Part shown: piece by piece, positions 143 to 58,009 of the stretch
How positions within the stretch are numbered: the first letter of the stretch is position 1
Layout of the letters: every line of letters starts with the position of its first letter
NCBI GenBank assembly: GCA_001179505.1
Contig: CDMY01000288.1
Location: 69,195-133,194 of the forward strand
Source of the DNA: Vitrella brassicaformis CCMP3155
Lineage: Eukaryota; Protista; Chromerida
Direction of reading: 5' to 3'
DNA length: 64,000 nucleotides
Position numbers and translations under genes: made by a program
The notes under the pieces: model-generated
What the model was told of the DNA's origin: nothing
Database searches by the model: none
The model's input: the letters and a program-made list of their open reading frames with translations, nothing else

Positions 143-1079
143 ATCGCAAACCGGTACGACGGCGAAATCACAGCGACACAGCCAAGAGACACAAACATCA
201 GCATCATTCAGTGCGTCTGTGTGTCTTGGCCGTGTGTCTCTCGGTAGTGATCATCGCTGCTTACATTTTATATTTCGAAGACTTCTCTCGACCTTCCGGG
301 CAGCTTCGTCTTCACCGTGAGTCGAATGAGGCCAAGCCCGTCTGCGCGCAGCCGTCAACCATTCCCTGTTCAGTCACCTGCTTGTATGGGCTGAAGATAG
401 ACCGTGAGGACGACGGGAGACGCTGGCAGACTGCAACGAGCTGCGGTGCGTCAAATACCAATGGACGTCCGTGGCTGTTGCACCGTTCGGATCGTCAGCA
501 GCCTCTCAGAGCCTCAACAAAACACAACTTTCAGCTGTTTGCAGCAGCGTCCACCGGGCGTCATGGCGGCGACCATGAAGCGCCCTCGCAAATGCGTAGC
601 CCCGCGCACCGCCCGCCTTCGCCAGAACCTCAACAGCATCATGCTGTGGCTGCCGCCGAAAGTTTGCGAGAGGTCGTCGCCGTCCGGCGGGCGTCGTGCC
701 ATTTTGAGCCGCTCGTTAGCAAGGGCGTCACACCTGTGCATCTCATCTTTGCCCTTCGTCGCCGCATAGACGATGTCGACGAGGCGTCGTCGCAAGTGCA
801 CCAGCTCCGCGCGCTTCTCTTGTTCCTGCTGGGCTGCATCGAGCTTGCGGTTGATCCTCTCGCGACTCTCGGATTCAATCGGGCGGCCTGTCATAGCCCA
901 TTTCCTGGGAGAAGTCGTGGTTCGAGCTGCCGATCCAGCTGACCCGCCGCCATGTGGATTAGGTGGGGACAGTGCGGCAATTTTCGCTCATCGGCGGGCC
1001 AATGGCCGGGGTGGGGCTGGGCCCCAAGGAAGGCAGGGACACGGTGTTGGCGAGGAGGTCTGCGGCCGTGTGTACCACG

Positions 1080-2004
1080 ATGCGCGCTACAGAGGCCCAG
1101 GGGCCATTTGTGGACGTGTTTGACCCCAAAGACCCGCCATTCACTTGGGGTGAGTGGCCACTGGGAGGCACCTGCGTGTGTCATGGATGGAGGGATGGGT
1201 GTTGCCTTGATGTGCTTTCTCAGATTGTGATGGCCGACGCTGCCGACACTACGCTGCCTTCACGCACTTCGCGAAGCGCGTGTAAGACGAGCCGCACCAC
1301 AGCACACCATACGTGGCCCTCGATTGTCTGTCGTCTGTCAGGTTGTTCACGCCCTGGTTCGACAGACAGGAGCTCAGATGCGTGCCGGGCCTGGTGTCTG
1401 AGCCCTCGGCCACCGACAAGGCCTTCAAGAAGTTCGAGACCATCTCAGCACAGGCACGCTCTCCCAAGCACACCACCCACACTCACACAGCATCCTGTAC
1501 AGTAACCGTGTGTTGCCGCTGCTGCTGCTGCTGCTGCTCCTGCTGCTGCGTGCTCCTCAGGCGGTGGGCAAGGTTTGGGGCAGCGACTATGTGGTGACTC
1601 ACGAGGAGGAGTGGCGAGAGCACTCCGGCAGACAGATACGCACCACTTGGGTGCTGCTGCCGGCGTCGGGAGCGGTGAATACAGCGATCTACCTGAAGCA
1701 TGGCGCGGCTGTTGGCACCACCACCCCACCCACCCTGGCCTTCGCTCGTGCAGAGATATGGACGACCGAGACGCCGTTCCCCAACAGATCGGCTGACTCG
1801 CAGGCGGCCGCTACCCAAGAGACACACGCACACGCAAGAGACACGAAATCAGCGGTGGCTATTATCGCTGCTTGCATTTTATATTTCCCGAGAGTGTTGT
1901 TCCTCAGCAGTGCATTCTGTGTTTTTTGGACGTGCTTGTGTACCATTGCTTCTGGAAATCTATGTAGCTACGACTCCAACTATCACGGTGAGACAGACAG
2001 ATAG
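1080..2004 (+). CDS. Multi-exon hypothetical protein (lineage-specific), possibly 5'-incomplete
   Basis: Four exons join in frame (about 1080-1149, 1224-1281, 1341-1453, 1561-2004): MRATEAQGPFVDVFDPKDPPFTW/DCDGRRCRHYAAFTHFAKRV/LFTPWFDRQELRCVPG...ISAQ/AVGKVWGSDYVV... The third intron needs a GC donor (or a GT at 1502). No recognisable domain. Confidence 0.45.
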
Positions 2005-2448
2005 ACACGCAGAAAGACACGCACAGATGCGCATACCGTCGGCCTTCGTGTGTTTGTGCCGTCGTGTGTGTGCGTGTGGACGAGGGCAGATCGGATGCGG
2101 GACATCATGGAAGATGCGGCACCCAGAATGGGCGCTTGTGGTCGCGCGGTTGGTAGCTGATGTGGGTGTCTATCTGAATGTGGACGCATCGAACACGCAC
2201 ATAGGCGGTGGAGCTGTTGTGCTTTCAGCCTTTTGCTTGCAGGCTTGTGGCACTCGTGTTTGTCCATGTCCATTCACCATCCACGTGCCTCTGGACATTT
2301 CTGATACGTCGCGTTGCAAGAAGTCATTGTGTGTGTCCGAACGGCGCATACGCACACGTGCAGGACTACACATAGAAAGGGCCGTTTGTCCTTCAACGGA
2401 CTCGACCTACCCACGCACAGGCCCACGCGACTGTCTGCCCGTCGTCAG

Positions 2449-3678
2449 CTACAGACCAGCAATCGCTTCAGCATTGTAGTGGATGTAGAACCGCCTTAAC
2501 CTACTCCTCTCTTCCCCCGCCGTCAGCCATCCGTCGAGAGCCTCGATAAAGGCCAGCACGTCACCATCCACCACCGTCTTGTCCCCATTGCCGTTGAGCG
2601 ATGTTCGGATGAATGCCGGTAGGTAGGACAGAGGTACACCCAAGCCCCCACAGCGGCTCAGCTTGGGGGCATCCGCAGCACGCTCAAGGCCGGCATGACG
2701 CCACTCTGACGGCCGGAAGACGTTTGTCAGGGCGAGGGTGCAGTCGATCTTGGCAGTCCGCATGTTGGCCTGCAGCTCCGGGTGGCCGTGTGGGTGTCTG
2801 CGGCAGTAGAGCTTGGCTATCGCACCGGCAGAAGTGCGGTCGTTCAGGCGCAGAGGGTAGCCCCACACGATGGTCGATGTGTCGTCGCCCGCCCCGTCCA
2901 GGAAGCCCCTGAGCGCGCCAGCATCCAGGCAACCGCCAGCCTCTCTCGCCAGCAGGGCCACAACGCCATCGACTACCGTGGCGGCACCTCGGTAGGAATC
3001 GAAGTCGAAATAGAGCAGGATGCGGGTCGACAGAAGGCATGAGGGGTCTCTGGCATTCACGTCGCCGCCGTAGCACGTCGTGAGGCTGCCAGGCAGGTCA
3101 TCGAGGGGAAGAATGGTTGGAAGAAGACTGGCAGGAGCGGAGGGGATGAACGAAGTGACCAGACGCTGGTCGTCTGAGACCGTGATGCGCCTCACGAAAG
3201 GGCCGCATTTGGTCTGGATGAGCTCATACTGCCGGGCGGCGAGGAGGGACATCTCCGTGGTCCTCAGTTGCAGCTTGAGCCCTCCGTCCATCGCATCGAT
3301 GTCGTCATCGGTGATGGTCAAAGGCAGCGCATCAATGTCACCCGTCCGATGAAGCATCGCCAAATAGCCAGACCATCGCTGGAGGCTCCTCTGCCTCTGT
3401 CGGTCCCGCAGCAGGCAATAGGCCACATAAGTAATGTTGGCCGGCAGCTGGACGCCGAAGCCGAGTGTGTTGCTGTCCTCGTCTTGGTTGAAAGCATCAA
3501 TGATTTGCCTCAGCTCGGTCTCTGGCGCAATTCCGGTGCGGTAGTCTTGGCGAGCGACAGTTCGGAGCGTTGCGATGGAGTCAATCGGCAACAGCGCCAA
3601 CACGGGAGTCTTCAGCACTTGAAGAATGTCAGCCAGAGTCATCGCCATTGTCCTCGTGGTTTGACCAAACAATCCCAT
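2449..3678 (-). CDS. Intronless 409-aa protein with an N-terminal F-box-like motif
   Basis: Long uninterrupted ORF with coding-like composition. N-terminal LADILQVLKTPVLALLPIDSIATLRTVAR resembles the F-box pattern. The remainder is unrecognised. Confidence 0.7.
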   Translation of the reverse strand: MGLFGQTTRTMAMTLADILQVLKTPVLALLPIDSIATLRTVARQDYRTGIAPETELRQIIDAFNQDEDSNTLGFGVQLPANITYVAYCLLRDRQRQRSLQRWSGYLAMLHRTGDIDALPLTITDDDIDAMDGGLKLQLRTTEMSLLAARQYELIQTKCGPFVRRITVSDDQRLVTSFIPSAPASLLPTILPLDDLPGSLTTCYGGDVNARDPSCLLSTRILLYFDFDSYRGAATVVDGVVALLAREAGGCLDAGALRGFLDGAGDDTSTIVWGYPLRLNDRTSAGAIAKLYCRRHPHGHPELQANMRTAKIDCTLALTNVFRPSEWRHAGLERAADAPKLSRCGGLGVPLSYLPAFIRTSLNGNGDKTVVDGDVLAFIEALDGWLTAGEERSRLRRFYIHYNAEAIAGL

Positions 3679-15456: not shown

Positions 15457-18400
15457 ATGAGTGAGTTTGAGGGCGGCGGCTTCGAGCAGGGCGAGGAATC
15501 CTCGGGCGACTTTGACTACGGCGAGTCGGGCGCCTTCGAGGGCGGCACCGACCTGGCGGGCGGCAGCGACGCCAAGGAGTGGCACAGGAGCCGCGAGGCG
15601 GTGCTGTTCGCCGTCGACTGCAGCGAGGCCATGTTTGACAAGAAGGACACGCCGGTGGAGGTCAGCGAGGGGCCCATCAAGACGCTGCGCAACGAAAAGA
15701 GAACCGTCTTCGAAGTGAGGCGGCTGGGCAGACAGATCTGATCTCACACACAGAGGGGGCAGACACACGAGCAGCGGGCCACTTGGTGTGGTGTGGTGTG
15801 TGATGCATCAGGACGTGTTGAAGACGGTGTGTGAGTTCATGAAGACGCGCATCATCCGCGGCAGCCGCGACAAGGTGGGCGTCATGCTGTACAACATCGG
15901 AGCCAAATGCGTGTTAGAACTGGGCGACGGCTTCAACGGTACGCACACCACCACCACCAGCACCCAAACCACCACCACCACCACACTCTCTCTCTCTGTG
16001 CTGGCAACTTCAGGCATTCACGTGTTGAAGGCCGACGGCCAGGCTGGCGAGCTGCAGGTGCCCGACGCCGAGCGCGTGGCGGCCATCGAGAAGGTGGGCG
16101 ACTGGACGCTCGACAAGATCCACAGCGAGTTCAAGGAGTGCGACCCGAAGGCCAAGCTGGGCGAGGTGTTCTGGCTGGCCAGCACCCTGTTCAGCCGCAC
16201 CGACATCAAGAAGACCCACAACTGCCGCCTGCTCGTCTTCACCACCGAGGACGACCCCGTGGGGCGGCACAAGGCGGCATTCGATTTTGCAGTCCAACGG
16301 TGGGCGAGAGGGGGGGAGGGAGGGAGGGAGGGGGCTGTGTGTGCACTCGTGTGGTTTGTGTGCGTGCAGTGCCCAGGACTTGCAGGCAGAGGCCGACCTG
16401 GAACTCTTCCCCATGCAGCCAGATGGTACACACACACACACACACACATCCACACACATGTGTGCAGCCAGACATCCACCGCCCTTCTCACACTGACCAC
16501 CCGTGTGTATGCGCCCTTCTGTGTGTGTGTGTGTGTCAGGCCGCGAGCCGTTCAACTTTGACACGTTTTGGAGCGACGTGCTGCAGGTGGGCGAGGAGGA
16601 CCACCCCGAGCTCACCGCAGCCCTCAAGCTTGGCGACCTCAAACAGCGCATCTGGTCAGCCAGTCGGCAGACCGACACACTTACACACACATGGCCCAGC
16701 CATTGTGTGTGTGGTGTGTGTTGTGCAGGAGTCGTGAGTTCAAGCAGCGGACGTTGAACAGCCTGACGTTCGAGATCGCAGAAGGCGTAGAAGTAGCGGG
16801 TCGGCACACACCACACCAACACACGCAACACACACATGCTCTTTGTGTCTGTCATGATCTCTGTCTGTGTGGTCATGTGTGTGTCAGTGTGCATGTTCAC
16901 TGAGGTGCTCCCCCAGCGGCCGCCGACGGCCATCAAGATCTGCACCGACGACAACACAGAACTCAAACCCAAAAGAGTCATGTGCGGCCNNNNNNNNNNN
17001 NNNNNNNNNNNNNNNNNNNNNNNNNNNNNNNNNNNNNNNNNNNNNNNNNNNNNNNNNNNNNNNNNNNNNNNNNNNNNNNNNNNNNNNNNNNNNNNNNNNN
17101 NNNNNNNNNNNNNNNNNNNNNNNNNNNNNNNNNNNNNNNNNNNNNNNNNNNNNNNNNNNNNNNNNNNNNNNNNNNNNNNNNNNNNNNNNNNNNNNNNNNN
17201 NNNNNNNNNNNNNNNNNNNNNNNNNNNNNNNNNNNNNNNNNNNNNNNNNNNNNNNNNNNNNNNNNNNNNNNNNNNNNNNNNNNNNNNNNTCACACACACA
17301 CAACACAACGACGCCTGCACCCATTTGTGTGCTCTGTGTGTGTGTGTGTGTGCAGTACCGACCTATCTGGTGCGTCTGTGCTGCCTGAGAGCGTTGAGAC
17401 CTACTTCGAGTACGGCGGAGAGCAGGTCAAGATCAGCAAACAGGAAATAGCTCAAATCAAGGTCACTAAGTCACTCAACGACACACACACACACACACAC
17501 AAGGCCAAGATGGTTGACGGATGCGCCTCACTCTCTCGGTGTGTGTGTGTGTGTGTGCAGAAGTTCGACGAGCCCGGTATGAAGCTGCTGGGGTTCAAGC
17601 CCAAGTCGTCTATCAAACTCGACCACATCGTCGAAAACAGCAAATTCATGTAATCCATCCCCCCAACCCCCCTCCCCCAACACAGACGCCCCATCCGTCC
17701 ATGTGTCGTGTGTCGTGTGTGTTGTCAGCTACCCGAACGAGAATCGCGTCAAGGGTTCCCGCGTCTTCTTCTCGGCGCTGCTCCGCAAGATGATCGAGAG
17801 GGACGTCGTGGCCATCGTCCGCCTCATCCCTCGCGCTAATGCCACACCGTACTTCGCCGCACTGGTGCCTCAGGTGAGCTCCTCCCCCCTCCGCTCTCCC
17901 CACCCACAGCCCCCGCCCCCATCTGTGTGTTTGTGTGTGTCCTTCCACTCATCAGCGAGAGTCCAAGAAGCTGGTCAAGCACATCGAGCCGAGTGGCTTC
18001 CACCTGATCGGTCTGCCGTGGGCCGAGGACATCCGCCATCTGCAGCTCGGCACCCACCACGTGGCCGTGATGGACTCGCAAGACGCCACCGAGGCCGACC
18101 AGGCCGACCCACACGCCATCATCAAGGACCACGACGAGTGGCGCGAGCAGGTCAAGAACGCCAAAAAAATGATCAGAGGTGCCCTGGGAGGCAGGGAGGC
18201 AGGGAGGGGACACGTGTGTGTGTGTGTGTGTGTGTGTTGGTGCAGGTATGAAGATTGACGATTTCCATCCGCAGCAGATTCCCAACCCGATGCTGCAGCG
18301 ACACTACCAGGCCATAGAGGTACCTACACACACACACACGCCTATACGTCACCTCCAATGCCAATTTCTGTGTGTAATGCATGTCTATGTGTGTGTCATC

Positions 18401-54379: not shown

Positions 54380-55662
54380 GCAGGCAGGCAGGCAGACACA
54401 CCACCATGATGACATACATGGCTGCATCCATCGTGTCGGCCCCTTTTCCTCCACGAGGAGGCACGGACCGGACGGTCACATCGCACACAACGGAGACAGA
54501 CAGGAGAGAGAGGTGGGGGCTCGTCTCGTCCGTGCTGTAGGCAGAGAAGAGAGAGAGAGGTGTCATGGTTCGATTGGGCCGGGGGTTCGGATTTTTCAAC
54601 TGAGTTGCGGGCTGTCTGTGTGTCTGACTGTTTGCCATAATCACATCAATGATCTCATCGGTTTTGCACTCACTGGCCCGCATGAGCACGTGTGTGTGTA
54701 GATACTCCTCACTATCTCACTTTCCCGCCTTCGAGCCGTTGCTGTCAATAGTGTCACCCACCACTATCGTCTGATGCCGCTTGCTCTTGGTTGCTCGTCT
54801 TTCTAGGCCCTCTGTCGCCTGACACGGTACGGTGCTGCTCCAGCAGAAGAACCGATGCAGGCCTGGGGCCGGATTGGCCTGTATTCTCTCTCTCTCTCTC
54901 TCTCATCGCTGCGTGTGGTGTGTTGTGCTTGGATGCACTGCATGCGAAAGAGCTGCACGTCATGTTTGTTGCGGTCAGCCGCCCGCTGCATGTCGTGTGG
55001 ATGGACGGACATGCCTTTCTGCCTGCCGGAGAAAGAGTTTTCAAGTGAGGATTTTGTCGTCGAGCGCGTGTACGTGTGCGTGTGCGTGTGCGTGGCAATG
55101 ACAGTGACAATGACACAATGGAAATCAGGGCTCGGAGCGTGATATAGAGGCTGATGATATACTTATAAAGGGAAGCATCCACACGGAGGTCTTGAAGGCA
55201 TAGAGCTATTGCAACACACACACACACACACACATGAAAGATGTAAGAGTGTCCTGTTACCACCCAACCACCCCACCCGCCCTCCGTCCCGCCGATACAT
55301 CTGTATGCACACGCGTAGATAGAGAGGGTATACAAATATGAACGAACCAGCCAAGCCAGAGTGGATAAAATATCGTTGCCTTGCCAGAGGCAAAAAGTTG
55401 AATCCGCTTCATCGATCTCGCTCCACCAGCCAGCCCTTTCCCAGCCAGCACACATACATATCAGAAGATAGGCAGAGCCATCCTTCCTAAGGAATTGGCC
55501 ACACCCTCCTGCACTAACGAAGATCCCCCAACCATAGCTACCAAAACCGATAGATCATCGAGAGAAAAACAAAACCTGGGCAGGGCATCACGCCCTCACG
55601 CACCGTTCGCCCGCCTGACTGCCCCCATGTGGTCTGCCCGTGTGGTGTGTCGGTGTCGGTGC

Positions 55663-57508
55663 TCACGCAAGGCCACGGATACACCTGAGGGATTATTGCA
55701 AACACACAATCCAACGAGTGTGTGCTGTACATCTTTCTCTGTTTCTGGGTCAATCGACTGTATGCTCGCTTACAGCTGAAGGTGGCGCTTCATTTCGTGT
55801 GCCGGTACGGGCTTGTTGCACCGGGGGCAGCATCCCGGCTCGCTTTTCGCACGCTTGGCAGGAGGCGTATTGGCGACGGCCTCAGGATGCTGGTCGTCCT
55901 GCTCACGCTTGATGGCCACCCCACCGCCGCCACCGAGGGGGATGCCCGCACCACCAAACGCCGGAAACGCGCCACCCACCGGTCCGCTAGCACGTCCGCC
56001 CCGCCCCCGGCCCGACGCACGACGTCCGCGGCCACGACCCGACACACCACCACCGCCCCCATCACCACCACCGGCAGCAGCAGCAGCGCCCGACGCACGA
56101 CCAGCAGAGCTCGATACGGCAACACCTGAATGAAGTGACAGTGCAGACATCGTTGAAGGAGGGGAGGGAAGGGGAGGGGAGGGGAGGCGACTTTTTGTTG
56201 TGTTATCTCACCTATGAGGGGTCGGCCGGCAGGTGTGTTGATGAGGTCCCAGGTGCCACTGCAGAGGGTCTGGTGGGTTTTGAACCACTTCTCCCCGTTG
56301 CTGCCGGGGGGATTGTTGCTCTGCTTCCAGTGCAACTCGCCACATCGCTGCACACGCGCACCCATGCCAACCCAATACGGCGTTTGGCGTCTGTGTGTGG
56401 TAGTGGTTGCGTACGTTGCACTGCCACACGTAGCAGCGTTTGATATCCGGGTCGTCGAGGCCCACCAGAGGGTTCACGCTCACACTAAGATCTGCACACA
56501 CAGACATGATGCCGACACACACACACACACACACACATGCGCACAGCCATTCAGGTGTTGACCGTTGTGTGAGTGTGTGTGCCCGTTTGGCCTGCCTGAC
56601 CGTCCTTGCGAGTATCGGGGTGGTTGTTGATTTCTTCCATCTTGGTGAGAAACGCCTGTGTAAGCAGGTGGGTGAGTGAGTGGAAAGATGGCTGCCTGCG
56701 TGGCGTGGCATTGCTTTGCTTTACCATACCTGTGTGTGTACGTTGGATTTGTCGCCGTACTTGACGTAGAGGTGCGCGTGGATCATGAGATGCAGCAACA
56801 CTTCCTGCACCAAAGGAGAAAAGAAAAACACGGGGGACAACCAAACTCTGCACATCCGTGTGTGTGTGTATGTGTGTGTGATTTGTCGCGTGCCTTGATG
56901 TCCTTCATGCTACGGGTCAGTAGGCGCTCCTTGGACAGCTTGATGACCACCTTGGGGTTCTTGTCAGTCTGACGGCACACCACGCAGCACACCGCAGACA
57001 GAGGCAAGGGAGATGGATTGATCGGTGTCATGTGTGATGCCATCGTCTGTCTGTTTCTCTCTCTCGTGTGCGAGCAAGCCAAGTTACGGGATAGGAGATG
57101 GTGCCATTCGCGGTAAACAAGTTCTTCTCCCACTTGATGTTCACCATGGTCACGCCGCCGAGCAGCTCACCACCGAAATACTGCACACACACACACACAG
57201 CCCCCCTCACTCTGAACACAGCCCCAGACCGCAACCGTACACTGCAACCGCACTGCACACCTTGTGGTTGTATCCTTGAAGAAGCGCTTGGCCTCTCGCT
57301 GCTTGGTGCGGATCTCAGCCTGCTGCTGCTGCATGACCGCCGCATTGAGCACAGCCTCTTTGAGGACGCCAGCCGCCTCTTGGTTGAGCTGATTGTGCAG
57401 CTCGACCGCCATGAGATGGTCCCTCTCACCCTGACCCTGGCTGTCCTCATCCTGATCAGGCTCGTCCTCGTCAGATGAGAGCAGGTCGATCACGTCCTGC
57501 TGCGCCAT
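55663..57508 (-). CDS. SPRTN: SPRTN/Spartan-like protein lacking the catalytic Glu (HLxxH), with ZBD, SHP box and UBZ4; possible frameshift in exon 1
   Basis: YFGGELL...IKWEKNL...VIKLSKERLLTRSMKDIKEVLLHLMIHAHL...VHTQAFLTKMEEIN...WQCNRC...WFKTHQTLCSG aligns with human SPRTN FFWGQL...IRLSEPLLKLRPRKDLVETLLHEMIHAYL...GHGPEF...WRC..HQKTCGG. FPAFGGAGIPLGG is an SHP box. CPRCNKPVPAHEMKRHLQLC is a UBZ4 (C-x2-C-x11-H-x3-C). Confidence 0.88.
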
Positions 57509-58009
57509 CTGATGGTGGGTGGGTGATACGGGGAGGGGGGGAGCGAACACCGGCGATAAAAAGTCCTCTTCTCCGCTTCCACAAATCGACGATTCTATCC
57601 TGCGAGCTCTTCGAGCGAGCTTTTTTGCTCCGTTTTTGAGGCGAAAGACCCTCCAAATTGGAAGACCGCATGGGGCGGTCGATTTGTGAGGCCAAAAGAG
57701 CTGTAGTGATTCGTTCAATCATCGCAGAAATGGCTTGAATGTACGAGTCAACATGAGGCACGCAACAGCCAGGTATATCGGAGCTGCCCTTGATTCACCA
57801 TCACGATGATATGCTTGCTCTGCTGATTCATCCCCTGCCCCCTCATGCTGCATGGGGACCGACATGGGCTGGGCAGCAGGCCATTCGCCTTTCTCTTGCA
57901 GCTGGAGCTGATACGTAGAATGTGCCTCCTGCAGCATAGGGTGACTGACATAGATCCTTTCCCCCCTCTATCAACATACATCCTCTGTGTGCCATAGACC
58001 CAGCAATTA

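What the first reader, a model, noticed from the sequence alone, without database searches (positions are those of the whole stretch)
55663..57508. SPRTN pseudo-protease: only the catalytic Glu is lost, while Zn ligands, SHP box and UBZ4 are all kept
Seen: the metalloprotease motif reads CAT CTC ATG ATC CAC = HLMIH (Leu codon at 56787-56789) where SPRTN has HEMIH. Retained are both motif His, the third Zn His (VHT), the four ZBD ligands (WQCNRC...HQTLC), an N-terminal DHLMAVELHNQLNQE helix like SPRTN DDLMLALRLQEEW, a SIM-like VIDLLSSDED, an RG-rich patch, an SHP box (FPAFGGAGIPLGG) and a perfect UBZ4. Known: SPRTN E112 is essential for proteolysis of DNA-protein crosslinks, SHP binds p97/Cdc48 and UBZ4 binds ubiquitin. 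Inference: a non-catalytic DNA-damage p97 adaptor or substrate-trapping SPRTN paralogue; I know of no description of one.
Basis: partly seen in the sequence, partly recalled or inferred. Interest (0 to 1): 0.75.

Follow-up and report, generated by a model that had tools for sequence, protein, structure and literature searches.

The report
Glu-less SPRTN paralogue with broken frame
The alga Vitrella brassicaformis has, besides a normal SPRTN DNA-repair protease gene, a fast-evolved, transcribed second copy that lost the catalytic glutamate but kept its zinc sites, and whose mRNA has a reading-frame break, so the annotated full-length protein is not what the transcript encodes.

Summary
The HLMIH motif is real. 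CTC sits at 56787-56789 in the window, in DNA contigs, in two spliced RNA contigs and in a sediment metagenome contig. The gene is a nine-exon, minus-strand paralogue of SPRTN in Vitrella brassicaformis CCMP3155. The same genome has a canonical HEMIH SPRTN on contig C340 that shares five intron positions with it.

- The Glu is not the only loss. The paralogue keeps 26 of 50 positions that are at least 90% conserved in canonical SPRTNs. It has lost the S-x-RMT-x-CAG strand. Its tree branch is about 18 times the median.
- The contiguous protein is not supported. RNA uses the intron-1 donor at 57261|57260. The ATG at 57508 then opens a 92-codon ORF holding the SIM-like and MIU-like parts, which stops at 57152-57150. 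The SprT, ZBD, SHP and UBZ4 frame is open for 312 codons from 57314, and its first ATG is at 57147.

Neutral-drift simulations reject decay since the duplication. All seven zinc ligands, a strict SHP box and the UBZ4 spacing are kept. My reading is a long-maintained non-catalytic SPRTN derivative that now carries a recent frame break. It is either freshly pseudogenised or makes a truncated product. I found no orthologue and no published description.

The parts
57261..57550 (-). Exon 1 as seen in RNA. The 5' end of the longest RNA contig is at 57550 and the first ATG is at 57508-57506.
   Evidence: The X9 contig lies unbroken on 57261-57550 and X11 on 57262-57521. L005 and L006 align to it.
57150..57508 (-). 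Upstream ORF of 92 codons, spliced across intron 1. It holds the SIM-like VIDLLSSDEDE (57493-57461) and the MIU-like helix DHLMAVELHNQLNQE (57421-57377). It stops at TGA 57152-57150.
   Evidence: Translation of the RNA-supported mRNA. GC by codon position is 0.81/0.25/0.77, which is coding-like in this frame only. It was called as a separate ORF on L005 and L006.
57312..57320 (-). Probable site of the frame break. TGA at 57317-57315 closes the SprT frame. The codon-position GC pattern switches from the ATG frame to the SprT frame here.
   Evidence: The sequence is the same in DNA (X1) and RNA (X9, X11, L005, L006).
57261..57314 (-). 18 codons (DPHQAARGQALLQGYNHK) in the SprT frame, with no start codon. 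They encode the conserved first helix of the SprT domain.
   Evidence: They align to D-x-F-P-D..L-F-L-x-Y-N-x-x-Y-F-x-G of canonical SPRTNs. The ATG frame reads an unrelated RFFKDTTT here.
57145..57147 (-). First ATG of the SprT frame (context ACCATGG), 2 nt after the stop of the upstream ORF. It starts the 283-aa ORF P0001.
   Evidence: Five ATGs lie upstream of it.
55663..57180 (-). Exons 2 to 9 of the CDS: 57180-57088, 56968-56894, 56804-56730, 56655-56601, 56491-56415, 56347-56212, 56125-55774 and 55684-55663 (stop TGA 55665-55663). Introns are 57181-57260, 56969-57087, 56805-56893 (GC-AG), 56656-56729, 56492-56600, 56348-56414, 56126-56211 and 55685-55773.
   Evidence: All eight joints are present in the X9 contig (seven in the joints table, intron 3 from the piece table), and five of them also in X11 contigs. 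The translation equals P0001.
56778..56792 (-). HLMIH in place of HEMIH. The Leu codon CTC is at 56789-56787.
   Evidence: All 58 fetched SPRTN homologues have HEMIH.
56736..56738 (-). Third zinc-ligand His of the protease site (V-H-T-Q-A-F, opposite human G-H130-G-P-E-F).
   Evidence: Alignment to 6MDW. The column is conserved and kept.
56261..56420 (-). ZBD-like subdomain with four zinc ligands: C-N-R-C (56420-56342, split by intron 6) and H-Q-T-L-C (56275-56261).
   Evidence: Alignment to 6MDW. PF22934 scores only 13-20 bits against a cut-off of 27. AlphaFold2 pLDDT for this subdomain is mixed, about 65-91 by ten-residue block. The best fold match is 6MDW.
55992..56039 (-). RG-rich patch (GRGRGRRASGRGRGGR) downstream of the ZBD, roughly where human SPRTN has its basic DNA-binding region.
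   Evidence: The position of the human basic region comes from PMC9240642. A DNA-binding role is inference.
55932..55958 (-). SHP-box-like motif FGGAGIPLG, matching F-x-G-x-G-x-x-[LIVM]-G.
   Evidence: The strict pattern appears in 0.33% of composition-preserving shuffles of the tail. The human SHP box is at aa 253-261. Binding was not tested.
55681..55829 (-). UBZ4-type finger C-x2-C-x11-H-x3-C (CPRC...HLQLC). It is split by intron 8 in phase 2, just before the last Cys.
   Evidence: pLDDT is about 91, with two short strands and a helix. The canonical paralogue has an intron at the same position and phase. Gln replaces the usual Asp or Glu.

Best explanation
This is a transcribed, fully spliced, fast-evolved duplicate of the SPRTN gene of Vitrella brassicaformis that has given up protease chemistry. 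The general-base Glu is Leu, and the conserved S-x-RMT-x-CAG strand next to the active site is eroded. It has kept the three-His zinc site, the four-ligand ZBD, an RG-rich patch, an SHP-type motif and a UBZ4 finger.

The pattern fits a protein that selection held for most of its history as a non-catalytic, zinc-scaffolded module. It would read ubiquitin through the UBZ4 finger, perhaps DNA through the ZBD and RG patch, and could dock Cdc48/p97 through the SHP motif. It would work beside a canonical SPRTN that has a PIP-like box but no SHP box.

In the sequenced strain, the gene has a roughly one-base frame break at about 57314-57320, between the N-terminal SIM/MIU module and the SprT domain. 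The mRNA therefore encodes a 92-aa N-terminal peptide and, separately, a 312-codon open frame whose first AUG (283 aa) lies inside the SprT domain. The annotated 385-aa protein is not encoded. The locus is either freshly pseudogenised or makes a truncated product.

Shown: the sequence, the splicing, the frame structure, paralogy, and degeneration with zinc ligands kept. Inferred: past selection, binding partners, and present translation status.
For: - The organism and the database proteins were identified.
- HLMIH is present in DNA and RNA.
- A canonical HEMIH SPRTN lies on C340. It shares five intron positions and phases with the paralogue: after ...YQ/...YP, before ETLLH/EVLLH, after ...HGP/...HTQ, the phase-1 intron after INALT/RKD, and the phase-2 intron inside UBZ4.
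- PF10263 scores 50.4 bits against a cut-off of 25.6. The match to 6MDW has E 2e-10 by sequence and 1.8e-9 by fold.
- The frame break is seen in two RNA contigs and one DNA contig. The codon-position GC pattern switches frame at about 57314. The stretch upstream of the ATG aligns to the conserved first helix of SprT.
- Degeneration: 26 of 50 conserved columns are kept, against 40 of 42 for the canonical copy. Identity to any SPRTN is at most 34%. The terminal branch is 7.86 against a median of 0.43.
- Selection: neutral drift from the canonical CDS to 31% identity leaves 170 codons stop-free in 0.65% of runs and 312 codons in 0 of 2000 runs. All 7 zinc ligands are kept while only 52% of conserved columns are, which is about 0.01 by chance.
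- GAR to CTC needs three base changes, which is unlikely in the short time since a break that has not been followed by any other lesion.
- The SHP pattern is rare in shuffles (0.33%). The paralogue has SHP but no PIP, and the canonical copy has a PIP-like box but no SHP.
Against: - No orthologue was found, so there is no direct test of purifying selection and no dating of the Glu loss.
- All read data probably come from one cultured strain, so the frame break could be specific to that strain.
- Five AUGs and a 92-codon ORF precede the 283-aa ORF's AUG, so its translation is doubtful.
- The 283-aa product would lack the first helix, which is part of the crystallised domain (aa 26-214).
- The SHP motif lies in a Gly-rich tail, and only 8 of 59 homologues have a strict SHP box.
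- The UBZ4 finger lacks the usual acidic residue.
- The ZBD Pfam score is below the cut-off.
- No binding or zinc measurement exists.
Confidence: 0.55

Rival explanations
1. This is a plain decaying duplicate. The copy lost its function, and the Glu-to-Leu change, the eroded motifs and the frame break are all stages of neutral decay. The transcript is leftover expression, and the retained motifs are remnants.
For: - There is a frame break with a premature stop, seven exon junctions upstream of the mRNA's end.
- Half of the family-conserved positions are lost, and the branch is extremely long.
- No orthologue exists in very large protein and metagenome collections.
- The SprT-frame ORF has no usable start before residue 30.
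Against: - Neutral drift to this divergence leaves 312 codons stop-free in 0 of 2000 simulations, with a mean of 7.8 stops.
- All 16 splice sites work in RNA.
- All seven zinc ligands survive while only 52% of conserved columns do.
- Retention falls with column conservation: 52%, 26% and 15%.
- Decay can therefore only be recent. It cannot explain the three-base Glu-to-Leu change or most of the divergence.
Confidence: 0.25
2. A full-length protein of about 380 aa (SIM, MIU-like helix, dead SprT, ZBD, SHP, UBZ4) is made from a minor splice form using a frame-keeping donor (57254 or 57236), or by recoding. It acts as a non-catalytic Cdc48/ubiquitin adaptor or as a trap for DNA-protein crosslinks.
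For: - GT donors that would restore the frame lie 7 and 25 nt downstream of the donor that is used.
- Logan contigs drop rare variants, and an X11 contig ends at the junction.
- The motifs on both sides of the break look functional.
Against: - Both RNA assemblies show only the 57261 donor.
- No transcript-derived protein equals the 385-aa model. Its only contig is the genome scaffold.
- The frame-keeping forms replace the conserved LLQGYNHK helix with unrelated residues.
- The overlap holds no X XXY YYZ slippery heptamer.
Confidence: 0.12
3. The protein is still a protease and uses another residue or a metal-bound water without the Glu.
For: The three His ligands of the catalytic zinc are intact.
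Against: - E112Q and E112A abolish SPRTN self-cleavage and substrate cleavage (PMC9240642).
- The conserved strand beside the site is also lost.
- All 58 sampled homologues keep HEMIH.
Confidence: 0.03

Closest known systems
Human SPRTN (DVC1, Spartan), structures 6MDW and 6MDX
   Same: It has a SprT metalloprotease subdomain plus ZBD (sequence E 2e-10, Foldseek E 1.8e-9). The three His and the four ZBD ligands are in register. An SHP-type motif and a C-terminal UBZ4 finger with the same C-x2-C-x11-H-x3-C spacing follow the domain. The N-terminal helix resembles the predicted MIU of human aa 1-20.
   Different: E112 is Leu and the RMT-x-CAG strand is lost. There is no PIP box. The UBZ4 Asp is Gln. 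Identity is about 30%. The N-terminal module is out of frame with the domain in the mRNA.
Canonical SPRTN of the same genome (G000:C340, locus L001, about 952-3030)
   Same: It shares five intron positions and phases, an N-terminal acidic helix, SIM-like strings, and a UBZ4 finger with Gln in place of Asp and 'CIR' after the last intron.
   Different: The canonical copy has HEMIH, keeps 40 of 42 conserved columns, is up to 61% identical to SPRTNs of other eukaryotes, and has a PIP-like QGTLDAFV but no SHP box. The two copies are 31% identical (49 of 157) over the domain.
Derlin-1, a rhomboid pseudoprotease with an SHP box
   Same: It is a precedent for a protease fold without catalysis that recruits p97 through an SHP motif (title cited in PMC10641518). 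This is what the paralogue may work like.
   Different: The fold is unrelated (a membrane rhomboid) and there is no shared ancestry. This is an analogy only.
Engineered SPRTN E112Q and E112A
   Same: These are laboratory mutants of the same residue and are proteolytically dead (PMC9240642).
   Different: They are single-residue laboratory mutants in an otherwise intact enzyme. Here the change is natural and comes with wide degeneration.
GCNA/ACRC branch of the SprT family
   Same: It is another SprT-domain family linked to SUMO/SIM and DNA-protein crosslinks. From my own knowledge, not checked here, mouse GCNA lacks the protease domain altogether, which would be a precedent for protease-independent roles in this superfamily.
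   Different: GCNA has a different domain order (a long acidic disordered N-terminus with a C-terminal SprT domain) and no SPRTN-type ZBD. The third SprT gene of this genome (C334, HECCH) is nearer to that type.

Membership tests
SprT-like superfamily (Pfam PF10263) | A domain match above the curated cut-off | tested here: met
   P0001 scores 50.4 bits against a cut-off of 25.6, E 2.3e-13. The six-frame hit in the genome scores 25.9 bits.
SPRTN (Spartan) family | A SprT protease subdomain followed by the Spartan-type zinc-binding subdomain (ZBD) | tested here: inconclusive
   PF22934 scores 13.4-20 bits against a cut-off of 27. However, the four ligands align to 6MDW, and 6MDW/6MDX are the only significant fold matches (TM only 0.45).
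SPRTN (Spartan) family | Descent from the SPRTN gene, shown by shared gene structure with the canonical copy | tested here: met
   Five shared intron positions and phases with the HEMIH gene on C340.
Active zincin metalloprotease | An HExxH motif with the general-base Glu | tested here: not met
   The motif is HLMIH in DNA and RNA. 58 of 58 homologues have HEMIH.
Active zincin metalloprotease | Three zinc ligands (His, His and a third His) | tested here: met
   All three align to human H111, H115 and H130. Metal binding itself cannot be tested here.
Active zincin metalloprotease | DNA-dependent proteolysis | not testable with these tools
   This needs recombinant protein.
p97/Cdc48 adaptor with an SHP box | The motif F-x-G-x-G-x-x-[LIVM]-G in a disordered region | tested here: met
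   FGGAGIPLG is present. The pattern appears in 0.33% of tail shuffles. The consensus is taken from my own knowledge. The position of the human motif comes from PMC9240642.
p97/Cdc48 adaptor with an SHP box | Binding to the Cdc48 N domain | not tested
   No complex prediction was run. No Cdc48 sequence of this organism was available by reference, and the reference option covers only bacteria, archaea and phages.
UBZ4 ubiquitin-binding zinc finger | C2HC ligands with RAD18/SPRTN spacing | tested here: met
   C-x2-C-x11-H-x3-C. A beta-beta-alpha element is predicted at pLDDT about 91. Pfam zf_UBZ scores only 14-16 bits against a cut-off of 25.6.
UBZ4 ubiquitin-binding zinc finger | A conserved acidic residue two positions after the His (H-L-D) | tested here: not met
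   The residue is Gln here and in the canonical Vitrella copy. It is D or E in 55 of 66 pattern matches in the homologues.
Intact protein-coding gene as annotated (CEL99777.1, 385 aa) | One open frame from the start codon through all domains on the observed mRNA | tested here: not met
   The ATG frame stops at 57152-57150. The SprT frame opens only at 57314.
Processed or long-dead pseudogene | Several disabling lesions, loss of splicing or loss of transcription | tested here: not met
   There is one frame break only. All introns are spliced, 312 codons are open, and transcripts appear in two RNA data sets. Neutral simulations were run.

The most novel reading that the evidence does not exclude
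The paralogue is a working, naturally selected 'dead' SPRTN. It would be a zinc-scaffolded reader of ubiquitin, and perhaps of DNA, that carries the only SHP-type Cdc48-docking motif of the Vitrella SPRTN pair. The canonical enzyme keeps the protease and the PIP box, so the two copies would divide the labour that one protein performs in animals. The stop-start arrangement UGAccAUGG could even give two products from one mRNA: a 92-aa SIM/MIU peptide and a 283-aa adaptor.
Probability: 0.2. Interest if true: 0.6.

Novelty: new variant of a known kind. Interest (0 to 1): 0.32.

Why it matters
SPRTN is studied almost only as an enzyme, and its non-proteolytic roles are known from engineered E112 mutants. 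A natural copy that selection kept without the Glu would say which parts of SPRTN are useful on their own: the zinc scaffold, the ZBD, the UBZ finger and the SHP box. It would also add the SprT family to the list of metallopeptidase families with pseudoenzymes. There is a practical point too: the public protein model for this gene (385 aa) rests on a splice donor that RNA does not support. The value is limited because the gene is known from one species and its frame is broken in the sequenced strain.

Tried and rejected
- My first gene model (379 aa, donor at 57254) and the GenBank model (385 aa, donor at 57236) were both rejected because RNA joins 57261 to 57180.
- Programmed -1 frameshifting was rejected because the overlap holds no slippery heptamer.
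- An upstream start in the SprT frame is excluded by four in-frame stops between 57473 and 57315.
- Orthologue searches all found only the protein itself:
  - An exhaustive HMMER search with the ZBD exon gave, besides itself, two repeat proteins and an octopus SPRTN.
  - Word searches with P0001, whole and residues 1-160, gave only itself. The first was flooded by Gly-rich words.
  - JGI metagenomes gave nothing by protein.
  - A gapped DNA pattern across the frame-break site also gave nothing.
  - Word searches see only proteins of 0.55-1.75 times the query length, so a blank is weak evidence.
- P0061 first looked like a second Glu-less case (HVLLH), but this was a pattern artefact. It has HEMIH.
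- The tree could not place the paralogue because of its long branch, so the age of the duplication stays open.
The 312-codon and 379-aa joins were used only in local scripts. The searches used single exons by reference or the database proteins P0001 and P0005. A look-up of the 379-aa join was left out.
- No complex prediction was run.
Full report
**What is there**

The region 55663-57550 holds a nine-exon gene on the minus strand. The genome has 72.70 Mb in 1064 contigs. An exact look-up names it Vitrella brassicaformis CCMP3155. The annotated product is CEL99777.1 / A0A0G4EQN6, 'SprT-like domain-containing protein', 385 aa (P0005).

**Is the Leu real, and is the gene expressed?**

Logan contigs of four public runs were laid on 55300-57900.
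- A DNA-type contig (X1) covers 56548-57900 without a difference.
- A 3589-nt spliced contig (X9) covers the whole gene with all eight introns removed.
- X11 shows five of the joints.
- A marine-sediment metagenome contig (X12) covers 56706-57268 without a difference.

The refuting result 'reads showing GAG' is therefore not seen, and the gene is transcribed and correctly spliced. The same transcript was recovered as loci L005 (SRR646408) and L006 (ERR558152).

**The frame break**

RNA joins 57261 to 57180. With that junction, the ATG at 57508 opens a 92-codon ORF that ends at TGA 57152-57150, ten codons into exon 2. This ORF holds the SIM-like VIDLLSSDEDE and the helix DHLMAVELHNQLNQE.

The frame that encodes the SprT domain, ZBD, RG patch, SHP motif and UBZ4 is open for 312 codons. 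It runs from 57314, just after TGA 57317-57315, to the stop at 55665-55663. Its first ATG is at 57147-57145 and gives the 283-aa MMETSP ORF P0001.

Several observations place the break at about 57314-57320:
- Codon-position GC is 0.81/0.25/0.77 in the ATG frame up to about 57315. The high-low pattern then passes to the SprT frame.
- The 18 codons before the junction read DPHQAARGQALLQGYNHK in the SprT frame. Together with YFGG they align to the conserved D-x-F-P-D..L-F-L-x-Y-N-x-x-Y-F-x-G helix of canonical SPRTNs. The ATG frame reads unrelated residues there.

The two halves were therefore once one frame. A shift of about one base at roughly 57314-57320 now separates them.

The GenBank model keeps the frame by extending exon 1 to a donor at 57236. 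My first model used a donor at 57254. Neither is seen in RNA. There is no slippery heptamer for -1 frameshifting. Five AUGs precede the AUG of the 283-aa ORF. That AUG sits in ACCATGG, two bases after the upstream stop. This is compatible with termination-reinitiation but is not evidence for it.

**Family and paralogy**

- P0001 matches Pfam SprT-like at 50.4 bits.
- It matches human SPRTN 6MDW at E 2e-10, with H111, H115, H130 and the ZBD C..C / H...C ligands in register.
- An AlphaFold2 model built on 30 sequences has pLDDT mostly 82-95 over the protease subdomain, 65-91 over the ZBD and about 91 over the UBZ finger.
- Its only significant PDB matches are 6MDW and 6MDX.

A Pfam search of the whole genome finds three SprT loci:
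- this gene;
- a canonical SPRTN on C340 with ETLLHEMIH;
- an HECCH gene on C334.

The canonical gene shares five intron positions and phases with this one, including the phase-2 intron just before the last Cys of UBZ4. This gene is therefore a paralogue of SPRTN, and the organism still has a normal enzyme.

**How far it has drifted**

- Against 30 canonical SPRTNs, it keeps 26 of 50 columns that are at least 90% conserved. The canonical Vitrella copy keeps 40 of 42.
- Besides the Glu, it has lost S-x-RMT-x-CAG and the Gly after the third His.
- Its best identity to any SPRTN is 34%.
- Its terminal branch is 7.86 against a median of 0.43, so the tree cannot place it.
- All 58 fetched homologues have HEMIH. 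That sample was gathered with words from an HEMIH protein, so it is biased.

'Only the Glu is lost' is therefore wrong.

**Was it under selection?**

- Random substitution of the canonical CDS down to 31% identity leaves 170 codons stop-free in 0.65% of runs. It leaves 312 codons stop-free in 0 of 2000 runs.
- All splice sites work.
- All seven zinc ligands are kept although only 52% of conserved columns are, which is about 0.01 by chance.
- Retention falls with column conservation: 52%, 26% and 15%.
- Going from GAR to CTC takes three base changes.

Together these facts say that the gene was translated and constrained for most of its divergence. The Glu was lost during that time, and the frame break is recent.

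**Motifs**

- FGGAGIPLG fits the strict SHP pattern, which occurs in 0.33% of shuffles of the Gly-rich tail.
- The paralogue has no PIP box. The canonical copy has a PIP-like QGTLDAFV and no SHP box.
- Only 8 of 59 homologues have a strict SHP box.
- The UBZ4 finger has the human spacing. However, Gln stands where 55 of 66 pattern matches have Asp or Glu. The canonical Vitrella finger also has Gln.
- The N-terminal helix corresponds to the predicted MIU of human SPRTN. That element did not bind ubiquitin in vitro (PMC12277127).
- E112Q and E112A are proteolytically dead in human SPRTN (PMC9240642).

**Relatives and literature**

No orthologue turned up. Two full-text searches found no Glu-less SPRTN. 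A 2024 review of metallopeptidase pseudoenzymes does not mention SPRTN, Wss1 or SprT.

**Verdict**

This is a real, expressed SPRTN paralogue without the catalytic Glu. It was probably kept for a long time as a non-catalytic, zinc-scaffolded module with ubiquitin and Cdc48 motifs. In the sequenced strain it is interrupted by a frame break, so the full-length protein is unsupported. Whether any protein is made today is open.

Noticed in passing
L001 about 952-3030 (G000:C340, about 106898-108976, + strand): This is the canonical SPRTN gene of the same genome. My model has eight exons and about 435 aa. It has HEMIH, an N-terminal UIM/MIU-like EELALALALAEQDE, a PIP-like QGTLDAFV, a SIM-like VVDLTDDSE, and a UBZ4 finger whose last Cys lies on a separate small exon.
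   Followed up: partly
L002 1363-2036 (G000:C334, about 16964-17637, + strand): This is a third SprT-like gene with HECCH and a downstream Cys-rich ribbon-like stretch (PF10263, 35.9 bits). A run of N lies just upstream in the scaffold.
   Followed up: partly
window, roughly 53.2-54.4 kb, + strand (L005 2459-3589, minus strand of that locus); exact window coordinates not mapped: The convergent neighbour is a GTP cyclohydrolase I gene (PF01227, E 1.6e-70). Its transcript and the SPRTN-paralogue transcript assemble into one RNA contig, so their 3' ends overlap or abut.
   Followed up: partly
window 55580-55741, 56706-57268 and 57792-57900: Contigs of a 2025 marine-sediment metagenome (X12; smaller shares in X13-X15) are identical to this Vitrella locus. 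The organism, or its DNA, therefore occurs in those samples.
   Followed up: no
window 56805-56893: Intron 3 has a GC-AG boundary and is spliced in RNA. Most introns of the gene carry (GT)n/(CA)n runs (for example 56154-56195, 56506-56547, 56851-56886), which broke the DNA contigs.
   Followed up: no
P0004 (Octopus vulgaris, 487 aa) and relatives P0006-P0011: Octopods have a second, long-branched SPRTN-like paralogue, distinct from P0043-P0045. It keeps HEMIH and carries an extra ZBD-like copy at its C-terminus.
   Followed up: no
P0005 (CEL99777.1) against L005 and L006: The public 385-aa model inserts nine residues (RCAVRLQCT) from intron 1 to keep the frame. It disagrees with both RNA assemblies.
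   Followed up: yes
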